A DNA stretch of 64,000 nt from Dimorphilus gyrociliatus (GCA_904063045.1 CAJFCJ010000009.1:972942-1036941); one strand, 5' to 3'. Positions 13,234 to 38,036 are shown, counted from the stretch's first letter. Program-made: numbers and translations. The notes: generated by a model not told the origin, from the sequence alone.

Positions 13234-13649
13234 TCTGTTCCTTTAAAGAATTTAAATTATTTTTCTTATTTAAATTTAAAGAAAATAATTAAAATATAAA
13301 TATGAAAGTAAGAATAATGGAATTAAAACTGCTTAAAGACTTTATATTATAGGTGGCGTTTGCTGTACAAAAAAATATATTTATTCAGTATAATAACAAA
13401 TATATAAAACTATAAAAGCAGAGCGAAAAAGTAGAAACCGGTTAGTAAACGGTTACTACTATGACAACGAGTTGACAAACTTATATAAAAATTGATTTTC
13501 GATCGTTCTTTATTGAATATTTTTATCATGCCTACTATAGGTATAACAATACACTTTTGATAAGTTGTCTTAATGTTGACACTGGTTGGGGTCTGTTTAA
13601 ATAAGCCCCATTCTCGATAAGAATAGTCTTAAAAAAAAAACTTTTAAAA

Positions 13650-16359
13650 ATGGAGAAGAAATTGCGGTTTGAAGACAGTTTAGATCTTGATAAGACCATT
13701 CCAGATTTAATTGAACAATCCCCGAACGGTTTGGTATTGAAGTTATGCAGCTCATCACTGTCAAAAATTCCCAATGGTAAGTGTTTTCAACCTGTTGGTA
13801 GGTCGATCACGTGATAATAATAAGAAAAAGTTATAAAAATCAATTCAATTAAGAAAAAAGAGAGGTTACTGTATAAAATTCGAATTGTGCTTGGTCATTA
13901 TCGAAAAGGATAACGTATCCTTTAAAGATGAAAGGAGTTGCGGCGCAAAATTATATAAAAATATACAAAAAAAACTTGCTTATACCATTCGAAATTTGCT
14001 TAGAAACGTTTAGTATACAAATTTACTTTAACAGAGTACTAAACTGCCGGTGAAAATATTGATTTTTCTAAAAACTTGTTTACTTTTTACAGGAGTTTTC
14101 TCTTCATCAGATATAGCAAAGGAGCTATCGAGTCTTATTCTTAATGATAACTCTTTAGAGGAATTAGATAATGATATATATAAATTGAAAAACTTACAGA
14201 TACTTAGTGCAGAAAATAATCGAATTCATATTGTGAATAGTGCTATTTACGCCTGCAAAAATTTGCAGATTATCAATCTCTCCCATAATGATTTAACAGA
14301 TCTGCCGAATGATCTCGTTTTTCTATCACAATTAAAACAACTTATCGTTACACATAATCAGTTAGAAGAACTACCCAAAGTTGTGTACAAGTTGAAAGGC
14401 TTGGAATTACTATCTATGGCTTCTAATAAGATAAGATACTTATCTGATGAAATTTGCCAGCTACAGAAGTTAATTGATTTCGATCTTGGTGATAATGAAT
14501 TGACGTGTATCAATTCGAAATTGTTTACTATACACTCCCTAAAAACTCTGGCTGTCCAAGGTAATCAGCTCAGGAACGTTCCTCATCTAATGGAGGATGG
14601 AGTCTGTTTAAGAAAACTTGATCTATCGAACAACAACTTTGATTTTATACCAGTTGAAATTTTAGAGTTAAAGTCTCTCCGACATCTAAATATGTCGGAT
14701 AATCAAATAATGCGAATTGATTGGAATGAAAGAATGACCAATTTAACGAGTGTTTTAGAAATGAACCTTAAAGGAAACGACCTAAATTACTTTTCTCCTT
14801 TAATTTTACAACCGCTACGTGATACTTTAAAAATATTGAACCTGAATGAGAATAAACTTGATTGTTTGCCACAGCAAATTGGTGATTTATACTATCTTGA
14901 AGAATTGTATGCAGAAAACAACTTAATAAAGGAAATTCCAGATGAAATAGCTTTTTGCACTAAATTAAGAATAATCAATCTAAATCAGAATAAAATCGAT
15001 AGTTTACCAGTCGAAATGAAAAGATTAAATAATTTACATATTTTGGAATTAGCCAATAACAATATTTCATTATTTTCGAATACCTTGGCAACTTTAACAT
15101 CGTTGAAAAAGTTAATTCTCTCCCATAACGAAATTGAAGATTTACCACTTGAAATGTCTAATTCAACTGGTATGGAATATCTTGACCTGTCGTTTAACAA
15201 GTTTAAAACACTTCCTTACTGCGCCTACAGTATGATCAAGTAATTTAAATAACTTTCTTGTTTGAATAGGTTGAAATAATATATTAAAATCATTATTTTC
15301 GTACAGGCTAAAAGTCTTAAATCTACAAAATAATCAATTGTCATTACTACACGGAGAAGTTGGTAATCTTTTCGAATTAGAAGAAATAAGGCTGGATGAA
15401 AATATTCTAGAGATATTACCGAAGGAAATGTGCAAGCTAAGTTTATTAAGGCATCTCTCCGTTTCCAATAATCGTCTTGGTAAACTTCCTAAAGAGAAAT
15501 ACCTAAGGAAATTAGAAGTTTTGGAATATCTAAACGTATCGGGAAACTACTTTGAATCATTTCCAATTCAGATAAAATCATTAATTAATCTTAAGTCATT
15601 AATATATAATCAGTACGATAGAAACCAAAAATTAGAAGAACTTCCCGAGGAGCTATCACAGCTTTCTAATTTAGAAAACGCAGAGTTTAAGTATAATGCT
15701 ATATGGCAAATAGACGCTGAGCCTTTAAGCCATTTACCAAAAATAAAAAGCATTCATCTGAATAATAACAAGATTGAGAGGATTACCGATGAATTTTGCA
15801 AAGCGGAGAATATTCAAAACATTCAAGTTCTAAGTCTAAATGGAAATTTGTTGACAAACCTTCCGTTAAATTTCGATTTATTAGCTAATTTAAAGTTTGT
15901 ATCCATTTTGTTAATAGCTTGTCGTTAAATAGTTATTAATTGCTTTCTAGGCACTTGGATTTGGAGGATAATCCTGTTCGATTACCTCCTTCAACTGTAT
16001 GCACAGCCGGTAATGTAAGAACGATAGGCTCCTTTATTAGAAGGGCAATATCAAGAAACGATGCCCTTTTATTAAGAGCTTTTGAATTGTTAAAAGATAA
16101 GATGAATAAACACGAACTTCGCTATTTGGCTCACAAATTTCGACTACCGGAAGTAGAAGTAACCGCAATAGAAAAGAAGCACAACGCAAAACAGGAATTA
16201 CATCAACGAGTCTTGGCAATTTTACATCTATGGAGGCAAGAGAATGGCGAAGAGGCAAACGTTGAAAGACTAATTCATATACTATACATCATTGGACTAG
16301 AAGAAGCTGCTGAACTGATTCGTGCTAATCTCATTTATACTCAAATCGTCAAATTTTAA
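13650..16359 (+). CDS. LRRD1: Leucine-rich repeat and death domain-containing protein 1
   Basis: Exon 1 from ATG 13650 (MEKKLRFEDSLDLD...) is spliced to a long array of LxxLxLxxN repeats. A C-terminal death domain follows (ELRYLAHKFRLPEVEVTAIE...VLAILHLWRQENGEEANVERLIHILYIIGL). Confidence 0.85.
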
Positions 16360-35375: not shown

Positions 35376-35978
35376 CACGAAAAGAAAACTTTCTTGTTTT
35401 ATTTCTAATCTCTGAAAGCTTTTCTTAATTGTTACATACTTTTGATTGATAATAATCAACTTTTCTTAAATAACATAAACATAAAAATAATAATAAAAAT
35501 CAATCAATATTTTATCGAATATTAATTTTCAAAAGCTTATAAAGTTTTCCGGTTAAATCTAACTTTCAAACTTTAAAATTAGTTGTCTGTTGCAGAGACT
35601 GCTGATTTCCTGTTCCTGTTGAACAACATGTATTGTGGGTAATCGTAGTCTTTTGAAAACTCTGATTTCGCGCTTATGCAAAAGCAAACGCCATCTAGTT
35701 ACCATTTCATTGGAGTTCAAGGACAGTTGAAAAAAATAGGCAAGTTTCTAGAATTAACGAAACGAAGCCAAATCAAACTACTTTATTTATAGTTTGGACG
35801 ATATTCGGTAAGTAGTTCATGATAATTCATTGATTGCAAAGAAGAGATAAAAGATTGAACAACAAATAAGTGATATTAAAAATAAGGCAACAAGCAGGAG
35901 TTGCATAAGGATATGTTGGCACGTTCTTTTACGGCGTTTTGTATCGCAGTAAACGCATTAAGAGCAAATTTATTCACC

Positions 35979-37159
35979 ATGGCCTGGAGATCTTCCGGAA
36001 CGACTAACGAAGAATTGATTAGCAAGTTAAAAGGTAGGCGTTGTCAATAACTAATAGGAAGAGAAGAAGCCAATGATATTGACTTTTGTATTACACGCTC
36101 ATCCGCTTCTAACAACTCAGCAAATGGAATAATAAAGAGTGATAGAGTTTTTCAAGCGATGATTTCCGTTGATAGAGCTAATTTTTGTAAGAATAAACCC
36201 TACGTTGATTCTCCTCAGGGAATAGGATATGCAGTGACTATAAGTGCTCCTCACATGGTAAATTTTAATATTTTTTAAATAAAATATCTATTTAATTATA
36301 CATAGAATGCTTAGACTTTACTGATTGCAGCATGCACATGCGCTGGAATTATTATCTGAGCATCTGCAGGAAGGGAAACGAGCATTAGATGTTGGATCAG
36401 GAAGCGGTTACTTGACAGCATGCATGGCAAAATTAGTAGGAAGTACAGGAAAAGCTGTTGGCATAGAACATATAGACGAGCTAGTGTCTTTGTCAAAGCA
36501 AAACTTAAATCGATCCCCTGAAACGCAGGAAATGCTGGACAATGGTCAGGCTGTTTTTGTTGTTGGCGATGGACGTCAAGGTTATCCCCAGTACGGTCCG
36601 TACAATGCTATTCATGTCGGTGCTGCTGCTCCAACTATTCCACAGGCAGTGAGTACAGTTAATTGAATTTTTTCTACCTGTAAAAATAAACACTTCGACG
36701 AGTAAATACTTTCTAGCTGGAAAATCAATTAGCTGAAGGTGGACGGCTAATTATACCTGTCGGACCTCGAGATGGTCGACAATATTTATACATCATTGAT
36801 AAAACCAACGAGGGTACAACAAACAGAAAACGCTTTCTTCCAGTTTCCTTCGTACCTTTGACTGATAAGAAAAAACAATACTGGCGTTAATTTTTCTCTT
36901 TATAAATTATCTCTCTTACCTTTTCTAATTTATAAATTAGCATTTCTTACATTTAACGAATAAATTCTATATGAAACATCAACAGTTAATTGAGCAATTA
37001 GCTCCTGGAGGACGCCTTATTTTACCTGTCGGACCCGAAGGTCATGATCAAGAATTAATTCAAGTAGACAAGGATATGCAAGGCCAAATAAAAAAAACAA
37101 AATTAATGGGAGTTATCTATGTTCCATTAACCGATAAACAAAAACAATATTCAAAGTGA
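35979..37159 (+). CDS. PCMT1: Protein-L-isoaspartate (D-aspartate) O-methyltransferase, canonical isoform (last exon B)
   Basis: [13 protein letters not shown]; TISAPHMHAHALE; [14 protein letters not shown]; GDGRQGY...[10 protein letters not shown]. Exons 35979-36033, 36121-36256, 36331-36648, 36986-37159 ([16 protein letters not shown]...[18 protein letters not shown]). An in-frame upstream ATG lies at 35913. Confidence 0.96.
36717..36890 (+). CDS. PCMT1: Duplicated alternative terminal exon A of PCMT1
   Basis: Acceptor tactttctag, phase 0, 174 nt like exon B. It encodes [63 protein letters not shown] at 36959-36964. Confidence 0.85.
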   Translation: MENQLAEGGRLIIPVGPRDGRQYLYIIDKTNEGTTNRKRFLPVSFVPLTDKKKQYWR

Positions 37160-37498
37160 TTTTATATACTTAAATTAAAATCTGTTGACATATTTTTACT
37201 ATTCACTATTTTCTCTTAGATCGCAAAGGATTGACTTGTAATAAATAATTTGATGAAGAAAAACAACAACCCAGAAGATTGAAAACCTTGTCTGCAAAAG
37301 CCGAAAAACAGAAATAAAGAGCCAGTGAAAAAAAAATAAAAAATGAAGACTTTTTTATTTTTTTTTATATGCTGATTTGATAAATTTCTATCTGACATTT
37401 GAACTTTTCCCCTTAAATATTCAATAATTTGTAAAGTTAAATAAACAACTTAAAATTTATCATAAACTGAGAATTATTTCTTAGAGAAGAGAAGAAGG

Positions 37499-37522
37499 GA
37501 GAGAGAGAGAGAGAGAGAGAGA
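37499..37522. repeat. (GA)12 microsatellite upstream of the USP gene
   Basis: Read directly. Confidence 0.9.
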
Positions 37523-38036
37523 CAGATGCACGCATACAAGAAATAAGACTGTTTAATAGATAAATAGGATATGGTATATCTAGGAAAAGATTAGTAAAAG
37601 TCCACCTAATTTGTTATAAGTCTAATAACTGCTCACAAAGGGAAATCTATTATGCAGGTCAGGCTGGCTTAAAAAGTTTGAGAACGAAGGGCAGGAGTTG
37701 AAAAATTGACATAAGGGAAAAATAATGTAATTATACATTATTTATAACCCTGAATTTTATCTTGGGCATAATCACTGTCAGATTTATTTTTTATGTATTA
37801 TGAATAATTGATTATTTGTAAACACAGAAATTTGTTAATGATGTTAATAAATATTGCAATTTGATCTACTAAAGCAATAAGCCAGATGGCGACACTTGAG
37901 ATAAAAGTGAAAATACTGGTTTTAAGAAAGGCATAAGCATAGAAAGGATAAACGAGTGAGCATAGCAGCTATTCTCCATCGATTGGACGTTTAGAATCTG
38001 ATAGATCTCGTGGGATATTTTTTTGAATCCAGAGAA

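What the first reader, a model, noticed from the sequence alone, without database searches (positions are those of the whole stretch)
36717..37159. PCMT1 has two tandem duplicated, mutually exclusive last exons encoding alternative substrate-binding C-termini
Seen: after the exon-3 donor (36648) come two phase-0 exons, each exactly 174 nt, each ending in a stop and each followed by a poly(A) signal. Exon B is the canonical animal type (GGRLILPVG...[11 protein letters not shown]). Exon A is open but diverged (GGRLIIPVG...[14 protein letters not shown], more basic). Established: this region carries post-motif III and the C-terminal strand (VxYVPL) that lines the isoAsp peptide/AdoMet site, and known mammalian PCMT1 isoforms differ only in the last few residues. 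Inference: one gene makes two repair methyltransferases with different specificity or localisation through exon duplication, a system I do not recall being described.
Basis: partly seen in the sequence, partly recalled or inferred. Interest (0 to 1): 0.82.

Follow-up and report, generated by a model that had tools for sequence, protein, structure and literature searches.

The report
Two swappable C-terminal modules in worm PCMT
The protein-repair enzyme gene PCMT of the tiny marine worm Dimorphilus gyrociliatus carries two tandem copies of the exon for its last 57 residues, and public RNA shows both spliced in, so one gene very probably makes two enzyme versions with different substrate-pocket ends, a known kind of splicing trick that appears undescribed for this enzyme.

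Summary
The window is from Dimorphilus gyrociliatus, an annelid.

- **Exons.** After exon 3 (ends 36648) lie two homologous 174-nt phase-0 exons. A is 36717-36890 and B is 36986-37159; both are open.
- **RNA.** Transcriptome contigs from two independent studies carry both junctions, 36648>36717 and 36648>36986.
- **Exon B is not terminal.** A 64-nt intron (37156-37219) removes its TGA, and a mini-exon adds SQRIDL.
- **Exon A is not a separate last exon.** Its contig runs on into exon B, so it behaves as an upstream alternative acceptor whose own stop makes B untranslated.
- **Selection.** Exon A is under coding selection: dN/dS against B is 0.33. Only 2.5% of neutral simulations stay open, and none approaches its family score.
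- **Database status.** Both isoforms already sit unremarked in the deposited annotation (DgyrCDS7451 and DgyrCDS7452).
- **Other taxa.** The tubeworm Lamellibrachia has the same architecture. Flea beetles have three alternative last exons.

Different specificity or localisation of the two enzymes is untested. I found no paper describing this. The scan has noted other tandem alternative exons in this genome, but not this one.

The parts
35595..35807 (+). 5' non-coding exon of the PCMT gene
   Evidence: X3 contig covers 35595-35807, and joints run from 35807 to two acceptors.
35887..36033 (+). First coding exon. It has two alternative acceptors, 35887 and 35950. The main ATG is at 35979. An upstream in-frame ATG at 35913 is present only with the 35887 acceptor or in the unspliced form.
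   Evidence: joints 35806>35886 and 35806>35949 (cut +1). Sequence read.
36121..36257 (+). Exon 2, carrying pre-motif I (TISAPHM)
   Evidence: joints 36033>36121 and 36257>36331 in X3 and X5. Pfam PCMT match.
36331..36648 (+). Exon 3, carrying motifs I and II. It is the shared donor exon and ends ...IPQA in phase 0.
   Evidence: Pfam PCMT E 4.1e-36; both alternative joints start at 36648.
36649..36716 (+). 68-nt intron removed when exon A is used. It is retained in one X5 contig.
   Evidence: joint 36648>36717 (GT..AG) in X3 and X5. X5 record 20 is continuous from 36619 to 36746.
36717..36890 (+). Exon A, the alternative C-terminal module: 57 codons plus TAA, ending KKKQYWR
   Evidence: It is identical to the C-terminus of DgyrCDS7451.
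36891..36985 (+). 95-nt spacer between the duplicated exons, with AATAAA at 36959. It is present in A-containing RNA.
   Evidence: X3 record 9 and X5 record 21 run from 36717 to 37015 without a break. AATAAA position.
36986..37155 (+). Exon B, the canonical C-terminal module. It is an internal exon in the RNA seen.
   Evidence: joints 36648>36986 and 37155>37220..
37156..37219 (+).
   Evidence: joint 37155>37220 (GT..AG) in X3 and X5. Depth in that bin is fully accounted for by the spliced contigs.
37220..37487 (+). Last exon. It codes the last base of the K codon plus SQRIDL, with the stop at 37239-37241, followed by 3' UTR. Contigs stop at the (AG)n repeat at 37488.
   Evidence: It is identical to the C-terminus of DgyrCDS7452.

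Best explanation
The D. gyrociliatus PCMT gene contains a tandem duplication of the exon that encodes its last ~57 residues (motif III, the beta6-beta7 hairpin, post-motif III xVxYVPL and the C-terminal tail). The exon 3 donor (36648) is joined to one of two acceptors.

- **Proximal acceptor (36717, 68-nt intron).** This brings in exon A. Its own TAA ends translation, so everything downstream, exon B included, becomes 3' UTR. The product is a 227-aa enzyme ending ...[18 protein letters not shown].
- **Distal acceptor (36986, 337-nt intron).** This skips exon A and brings in exon B. Exon B is then spliced to a mini-exon, giving a 233-aa enzyme ending ...[24 protein letters not shown]. That architecture matches the one that gives mammalian isozyme II its -RDEL tail.

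**Shown:**
- both junctions occur in RNA;
- exon A is under coding selection;
- both modules are compatible with the fold.

**Inferred:**
- both proteins are made and active;
- because the swapped part lines the substrate pocket and carries the tail, they differ in substrate preference and/or location (A without, B with an xDL-type tail).
For: **RNA**
- joints 36648>36717 and 36648>36986, both GT..AG, appear in contigs of two runs from two studies. Those runs are RNA-derived, because introns 1 and 2 are spliced out in their contigs.
- The junction-contig word depths are 159.8 against 325.6 in X3 and 29.4 against 54.2 in X5. That is roughly one third A, but the figure is only indicative because these are contig depths.

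**Database**
- DgyrCDS7451 and DgyrCDS7452 are exact substrings of my two spliced translations.

**Selection on exon A**
- identity by codon position is 36/37/25 of 57. dN/dS is 0.33 with dS about 1.5.
- only 2.5% of 3000 neutral derivatives of B at the same divergence stay open.
- on a profile built from 114 animal C-terminal modules, A scores 75.7 bits. The simulations have a mean of 3.7 and a maximum of 26.1.
- exon A keeps all 13 invariant residues of the module in a 52-sequence alignment.

**Structure**
- AlphaFold2 gives the same secondary structure and similar confidence for both modules.

**Other taxa**
- Lamellibrachia satsuma has an upstream A-like exon with its own stop and AATAAA. 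This is followed by a canonical exon plus a mini-exon that gives ...RDDL.
Against: - No protein evidence exists for isoform A.
- If the 37156-37219 intron is also removed from A-containing RNA, the A stop lies about 265 nt upstream of an exon junction. In some animals that would mark the RNA for nonsense-mediated decay.
- Contig depths cannot give true isoform ratios, poly(A) sites or the linkage of 5' and 3' variants.
- Exon A departs from near-invariant animal residues. In human numbering these are L207F, M208L, G209P, I211S, Y212F and G186D. The changes could lower or alter activity.
- RIDL does not fit the classical KDEL-type pattern as I recall it.
- The structure models rest on an alignment made almost wholly of canonical sequences, so they are a weak test of exon A.
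Confidence: 0.75

Rival explanations
1. Exon A inclusion is mainly regulatory. Choosing the proximal acceptor yields an mRNA with a premature stop relative to the downstream intron and a long 3' UTR. That mRNA is degraded or poorly translated, and so it tunes the amount of the canonical B enzyme. Little isoform A protein is made.
For: -: the A contig runs on into exon B, and the only form of the last intron seen is spliced. The A stop would therefore sit about 265 nt upstream of a junction.
- X5 also holds a contig that retains intron 3. This shows that processing at this site is variable.
Against: - A pure poison exon needs only a stop. Exon A instead keeps a full-length open frame with no indel, all invariant family residues and a clear excess of third-position change.
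- A-junction contigs are abundant at steady state in two data sets.
- Lamellibrachia exon A' has AATAAA at its stop, as a real terminal exon would.
Confidence: 0.12
2. Isoform A is made but is not a repair methyltransferase. It would be a catalytically weak isoAsp or AdoMet binder with another role, comparable to the PCMTD proteins, or a modulator of isoform B.
For: - Exon A changes several near-invariant post-motif III residues: L207F, M208L, G209P, I211S and Y212F in human numbering.
- PMC12590147 shows that a PCMT-like domain can bind AdoMet and substrate without methylating.
Against: - Every invariant residue of the module is kept.
- The pattern small residue-V-polar residue-F/Y-VPL is the normal one in active bacterial-type enzymes among the hits, for example LPVRFVPL and AVRFVPL.
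- The catalytic N-terminal two thirds are shared with isoform B.
Confidence: 0.1
3. The duplication is an assembly or haplotype artefact, or exon A is a dead relic that is never used.
For: None found. The best DNA holder (X4) may be the sample the assembly came from, so it is not independent.
Against: -: contigs of X3 (a different study, from 2017) and X5 reproduce 36717-37015 across A, the spacer and the start of B with no differences. They also carry the spliced 36648>36717 junction.
- The selection tests argue against a dead relic.
Confidence: 0.02

Closest known systems
Mammalian PCMT1 isozymes I and II (-RWK against -RDEL), made by alternative splicing. Source: MacLaren et al. 1992 and Potter et al. 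1992, as cited in PMC7859441.
   Same: - One PCMT gene gives enzymes with different C-termini by splicing at the 3' end.
- The exon B plus mini-exon arrangement has a donor just before an in-frame stop and a tail ending in xDL. It looks like the arrangement that yields -RDEL, and it is also present in Lamellibrachia (...RDDL).
   Different: - The mammalian isoforms differ only in the last two or three residues.
- Here the whole 57-residue module is replaced by a diverged duplicate that is 50% identical. The module covers motif III, post-motif III and the tail.
- RIDL is not a classical retrieval signal.
Tandem duplicated exon substitution, or mutually exclusive homologous exons. Examples: ATE1 exons 7a/7b (PMC7797038) and surveys of human events (PMC9741552, PMC8373072), seen.
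   Same: - Homologous exons of equal length and phase lie in tandem.
- Both are under purifying selection.
- They give isoforms identical except for a homologous stretch inside the functional core.
   Different: - Exclusivity here is at the level of translation, not of RNA content. Exon A carries a stop, and the RNA seen runs on through exon B.
- No steric, spliceosome-incompatibility or proven RNA-structure mechanism is needed.
PCMT locus of the tubeworm Lamellibrachia satsuma (L001; NCBI model P0157)
   Same: - The order and phase are the same.
- The upstream A-like exon (13237-13422) has its own stop.
- A canonical exon (14254-14423) and a mini-exon (from 14851) follow.
- dN/dS between A' and B' is 0.16.
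   Different: - The spacer is about 830 nt instead of 95 nt.
- AATAAA overlaps the A' stop.
- The public model chains A' to B' into a single 309-aa protein, which is probably wrong.
- Whether A and A' are orthologous is unresolved. No RNA was examined.
PCMT loci of the flea beetles Phyllotreta striolata (L084) and Psylliodes chrysocephalus (L085)
   Same: - Shared 5' exons are followed by alternative duplicated 3' parts, each last exon with its own stop.
- The Psylliodes annotation has two models with one start and different 3' ends.
- The alternative modules show the same substitutions as the annelid ones at human positions 207, 209 and 211 in all six, and at 212 in four of the six, the two annelid ones among these.
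   Different: - The duplicated unit is two exons, plus a further duplication of the last exon.
- The last-exon boundary lies 7 codons further downstream.
- The duplication is therefore almost certainly independent. No RNA was examined.
Zebrafish pcmt and pcmtl gene paralogues (PMC7859441)
   Same: Two isoaspartyl methyltransferases in one animal that differ, among other things, in the C-terminal tail (RDEL against GDEL).
   Different: They arose by whole-gene duplication, not by an exon-level swap within one gene.

Membership tests
Protein-L-isoaspartate(D-aspartate) O-methyltransferase (PCMT/PIMT, PF01135) | Match to the family profile above its curated cut-off, over the whole domain | tested here: met
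   exon 2 scores 47.0 bits, exon 3 125.2 bits, exon A 47.9 bits and exon B 51.9 bits, against a cut-off of 20.3. Together they cover profile positions 13-209 of 210.
Protein-L-isoaspartate(D-aspartate) O-methyltransferase (PCMT/PIMT, PF01135) | Signature motifs: pre-motif I (TISAPHMHA), motif I ([11 protein letters not shown]), motif II (VGDGR), motif III (GGRLIxPVG) and post-motif III (xVxF/YVPL) | tested here: met
   Translations. Both modules keep all 13 invariant columns of a 52-sequence alignment.
Protein-L-isoaspartate(D-aspartate) O-methyltransferase (PCMT/PIMT, PF01135) | Close sequence relative with a solved PIMT structure, and a confident model of that fold | tested here: met
   human PIMT 1I1N matches at E 5.6e-68; mean pLDDT is 87.4 for isoform A and 85.2 for isoform B.
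Protein-L-isoaspartate(D-aspartate) O-methyltransferase (PCMT/PIMT, PF01135) | AdoMet-dependent methylation of L-isoAsp or D-Asp residues by each isoform | not testable with these tools
   This needs recombinant enzyme assays.
Mutually exclusive tandem duplicated exons | Tandem homologous exons of the same length and phase, both kept by selection | tested here: met
Mutually exclusive tandem duplicated exons | Exactly one of the exons is present in each mature mRNA | tested here: not met
   contigs that carry exon A continue without a break through the spacer into exon B. B-form RNA does lack exon A.
Alternative last exons with their own poly(A) sites | Each alternative exon ends the transcript at its own cleavage site | tested here: inconclusive
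   AATAAA lies at 36959 after A. The A contigs nevertheless reach exon B, and contigs cannot show 3' ends. Exon B is demonstrably not a last exon (joint 37155>37220).
Alternative 3' splice-site event | One donor is joined to two acceptors, and the stretch between the acceptors is kept when the upstream one is used | tested here: met
   joints 36648>36717 and 36648>36986. There is a continuous contig from 36717 to 37015 in both X3 and X5.
KDEL-type ER-retrieval tail (as in PCMT1 isozyme II, -RDEL) | A C-terminal tetrapeptide of the [KRHQSA]-[DENQ]-E-L type. The pattern is recalled from memory, not checked with a tool. | tested here: not met
   Isoform B ends in RIDL. Lamellibrachia ends in RDDL. 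Other animal PCMTs in the hit lists end in RDEL, RDEI, KEEL or GRDL. Retrieval function cannot be tested here.

The most novel reading that the evidence does not exclude
PCMT has repeatedly evolved a swap-in C-terminal active-site module. It has done so in annelids, once or twice, and in flea beetles. The alternative modules converge on the same changes around the VxYVPL strand: loss of L207 and G209, I/V211 to S/T/A, and often Y212 to F (human numbering). They lack the xDL tail. This would define a second, so far unrecognised functional class of animal repair methyltransferase, with a different substrate range or compartment, made from the same gene.
Probability: 0.3. Interest if true: 0.7.

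Novelty: new member of a known kind. Interest (0 to 1): 0.52.

Why it matters
PCMT is a near-universal, highly conserved protein-repair enzyme. What sets its substrate range, and what its C-terminal helix and tails do, remain open questions. For the helix, PMC12590147 says its function has not been characterised.

This gene offers a natural experiment. The two enzymes share their first 170 residues and differ only in the module that forms half of the substrate pocket and the tail. Both are expressed, and both are kept by selection. Similar modules in a tubeworm and in flea beetles carry the same substitutions, which points to particular residues for mutagenesis.

The finding also corrects three public gene models. 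The two Dimorphilus CDS are truncated at the N-terminus. The Lamellibrachia model chains both modules into one protein.

Tried and rejected
- **Word search with exon A alone.** No candidates. The length window excludes full-length proteins.
- **Word search restricted to the exon A region of DgyrCDS7451.** It returned only the query and three canonical-type proteins at about 50% identity.
- **Exhaustive representative search with exon A.** Nothing exceeded 59% identity. The two top multi-stretch hits (P0002, P0008) are unrelated repeat proteins. Isoforms of one gene collapse into one 50% cluster, so this blank is weak evidence.
- **Cluster look-up of ten A-like fragments.** No organism names were returned.
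- **Contigs behind P0017 and P0044.** One holds two tandem whole PCMT genes. The other has no second module.
- **Metagenome scan.** It returned 80 loci, mostly intronless or cDNA-like. None had tandem modules.
- **Tree of 40 modules on 57 columns.** It is unresolved. Neither a DimA+LamA clade (AU p 0.19) nor a DimA+DimB clade (p 0.54) is rejected. DimA grouped with the beetle alternative modules, which I read as convergence or long-branch attraction because the exon boundaries differ. Two further constraint tests did not finish in time.
- **Synonymous distances between species.** They are saturated, so they cannot date the duplication.
- **RNA structure.** A hairpin joins the 5' end of intron 3 to the start of exon A (-18.2 kcal/mol, z -2.0), and the same 11-nt element recurs at the B acceptor. 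This is suggestive of competing structures. It is statistically marginal and cannot be tested by covariation without close relatives, so I do not claim it.
- **Third copy of the module.** I looked in the window and found none.

Full report
**What is in the sequence**

The gene lies on the + strand.
- The ATG is at 35979 and exon 1 runs to 36033.
- Exon 2 is 36121-36257 and exon 3 is 36331-36648.
- Exon 3 ends in phase 0 with ...AAAPTIPQA, followed by GTGAGT.
- Two acceptors follow. TTTCTAG|CTG at 36717 opens exon A, and CAACAG|TTA at 36986 opens exon B.
- Each reading frame is 57 codons plus a stop, which is 174 nt.
- The two exons align without a gap. They are 100/174 nt and 28/57 aa identical, while their flanks are no more alike than chance.
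- Both match the last fifty positions of the Pfam PCMT profile, at 47.9 bits for A and 51.9 bits for B. Exons 2 and 3 match the rest of the profile.
- No third copy exists in the window.

**Whose gene it is**

A profile search returned two deposited proteins of Dimorphilus gyrociliatus, DgyrCDS7451 (196 aa) and DgyrCDS7452 (202 aa).
- DgyrCDS7451 is an exact substring of my exon 1-2-3-A translation.
- DgyrCDS7452 is an exact substring of exon 1-2-3-B plus the mini-exon described below.
- Both deposited models start at Met32. The RNA contigs join exon 1 to exon 2, so the models are truncated at the N-terminus.

Both isoforms are therefore already in the public annotation, but nothing in the literature library mentions them. 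The genome paper reports a 73.8-Mb genome, a median intron of 66 bp and splicing adapted to short introns (PMC7854359). That fits the 68-nt intron in front of exon A.

**What the RNA shows**

Two runs that were not labelled as RNA (X3, study P3, 2017; X5, study P4, 2020) hold contigs in which introns 1 and 2 are removed, so they are transcriptomes. Both carry two joints from the same donor, each GT..AG: 36648>36717 and 36648>36986.

The word depths of the junction contigs are 159.8 against 325.6 in X3 and 29.4 against 54.2 in X5. That suggests roughly one third A. These are contig depths, so the tool's own warning applies and I use them only as an indication that A is not rare.

Three points change the anatomy.
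1. In both runs exon B is spliced from 37155 to 37220 (GT..AG, 64 nt). The TGA at 37157 lies in an intron, and the B protein ends ...KQYSK-SQRIDL with a stop at 37239.
2. The exon A contig is continuous from 36717 to 37015 in both runs. At least part of the A-form RNA therefore reads through the 95-nt spacer into exon B. Contigs cannot show whether some molecules end at the AATAAA at 36959.
3. X5 also has a contig that retains the 68-nt intron.

The event is best described as one donor choosing between two acceptors. The stop in exon A makes the downstream copy untranslated.

**Is exon A a coding exon or a relic?**

- Identity between A and B is 36, 37 and 25 of 57 at codon positions 1, 2 and 3.
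- pN is 0.36 and pS is 0.65, giving dN/dS of 0.33 with dS about 1.5.
- I simulated 3000 neutral derivatives of exon B with the observed 73 differences. Only 2.5% stay open.
- On a profile built from 114 other animal C-terminal modules, the simulations score 3.7 bits on average and 26.1 at most. Exon A scores 75.7 and exon B 103.8.
- Exon A keeps all 13 invariant residues of the module in a 52-sequence alignment.
- AlphaFold2 gives the same helix and three strands, with similar confidence, for both isoforms. This is a weak test because the alignment is almost all canonical sequences.

I conclude that exon A has been maintained as protein-coding sequence since an old duplication.

**What differs**

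- The closest solved structure is human PIMT (1I1N, E 5.6e-68). In the module, the human number equals the DgyrCDS7451 number plus 28.
- Motif III (GGRLIxPVGP), Q-L-DK and VPLTDK-KQY are kept. The beta hairpin between them is largely replaced.
- The post-motif III strand reads FLPVSF in A and LMGVIY in B.
- Among 114 canonical animal modules, these six positions are L (111), M (108), G (101), V (114), V/I (101) and Y (112).
- A is more basic (+5 against +1) and has no xDL tail.
[quoted passage not shown] It also states that the C-terminal helix restricts the pocket and that the function of this helix has not been characterised.

A difference in substrate handling or location is therefore plausible, but it is inference.

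**Relatives**

The NCBI model of the tubeworm Lamellibrachia satsuma (P0157, 309 aa) contains two modules in series. Its locus (L001) shows why.
- An A-like exon (13237-13422) is open to its own TAA, and AATAAA overlaps the stop.
- About 830 nt downstream lies a canonical exon (14254-14423) whose donor sits just before an in-frame stop.
- A mini-exon follows and gives ...KQWPRRHRDDL.
- The predictor joined A' to B' through an internal GT. That is probably an error.
- dN/dS between A' and B' is 0.16.

The architecture is thus shared by two distant annelids. Whether it comes from one duplication is open.
- Pairwise identities are DimA-LamA 29, DimA-DimB 27, LamA-LamB 32 and DimB-LamB 38, out of 54.
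- The 57-column tree rejects neither grouping.

Two flea beetles show an independent version.
- After shared 5' exons come a canonical two-exon 3' cassette and a duplicated cassette with two further tandem last exons.
- All are open and each has its own stop. The arrangement is conserved between the two genera.
- The Psylliodes annotation already has two models with one start and different ends.
- The exon boundary differs from the annelid one.
- All six alternative modules lose L207 and G209 and have S/T/A at 211. Four of the six, including both annelid ones, have F at 212.

**Comparison with what is known**

- Mammalian PCMT1 makes -RWK and -RDEL isozymes by 3' alternative splicing (MacLaren 1992 and Potter 1992, as cited in PMC7859441). 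The exon B plus mini-exon arrangement resembles that one.
- Swapping a homologous tandem exon is a well-known kind of event (PMC9741552, PMC8373072, PMC7797038).
- What is new is its occurrence in PCMT, its position in the substrate-pocket half of the enzyme, and the way exclusivity is reached: a stop codon rather than RNA-level exclusion.

I therefore class it as a new member of a known kind.

The scan has noted other tandem alternative exons in this same genome (nicotinic receptor, SAMHD1, CPT1, p24/TMED). This suggests that such pairs survive genome compaction well. None of those notes concerns this locus.

**Limits**

Noticed in passing
window 35807-35979: The 5' exon (35595-35807) is joined in X3 to two acceptors, 35887 and 35950. 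Only the first keeps an upstream in-frame ATG at 35913, which would add 22 mostly hydrophobic residues (MLARSFTAFCIAVNALRANLFT) before MAWRSS. X5 has an unspliced form that also includes it. The Lamellibrachia model has a 25-residue hydrophobic extension as well. Combined with the xDL tail of isoform B, this could mean an ER-directed form.
   Followed up: partly
window 35979-36160: The deposited CDS DgyrCDS7451 and DgyrCDS7452 start at Met32 (MISVDR...). RNA contigs join exon 1 (ATG 35979) to exon 2, so the public models appear to lack the first 31 residues.
   Followed up: partly
window 36619-36746: X5 holds a contig that retains the 68-nt intron 3, at a depth like that of the spliced junction contigs. 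Introns 1 and 2 show no retention. Read through, it ends the frame after ...PQAVSTVN.
   Followed up: no
window 36655-36666, 36725-36735 and 36982-36993: A 12-nt exact repeat, ACAGTTAATTGA, sits just after the exon 3 donor and again across the exon B acceptor. Both copies are complementary to the start of exon A. The predicted hairpin of intron 3 with exon A has -18.2 kcal/mol and z -2.0. This could be a pair of competing structures steering acceptor choice, but it is statistically marginal.
   Followed up: partly
L001 13237-14880 (Lamellibrachia satsuma): The NCBI protein model chains the A-like and canonical modules into one 309-aa protein by using a GT inside exon A'. The exon is in fact open to its own stop, with AATAAA at that stop.
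   Followed up: yes
L084 4000-6320 and L085 8000-43540 (flea beetles): The PCMT genes have shared 5' exons, a canonical 3' cassette and a duplicated cassette with two extra tandem last exons. All are open and the arrangement is conserved between Phyllotreta and Psylliodes. The Phyllotreta model fuses two cassettes into a 359-aa protein.
   Followed up: partly
L002 200-3345 (Logan contig, organism unknown): Two whole PCMT genes lie in tandem on one 4.2-kb contig, which is a gene-level rather than exon-level duplication. The second gene has LISVVFVPL in place of LMGVIYVPL.
   Followed up: no
window 36332-36557: A coral metatranscriptome (X1) holds a 226-nt contig of exon 3 with a single difference (T>C at 36471). 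This worm, or a very close relative, was present in that sample.
   Followed up: no
window 37488-37535: An (AG)n microsatellite lies in or just after the 3' UTR. All RNA contigs stop there because the tool skips the repeat, so the true 3' end of the gene is not defined.
   Followed up: no
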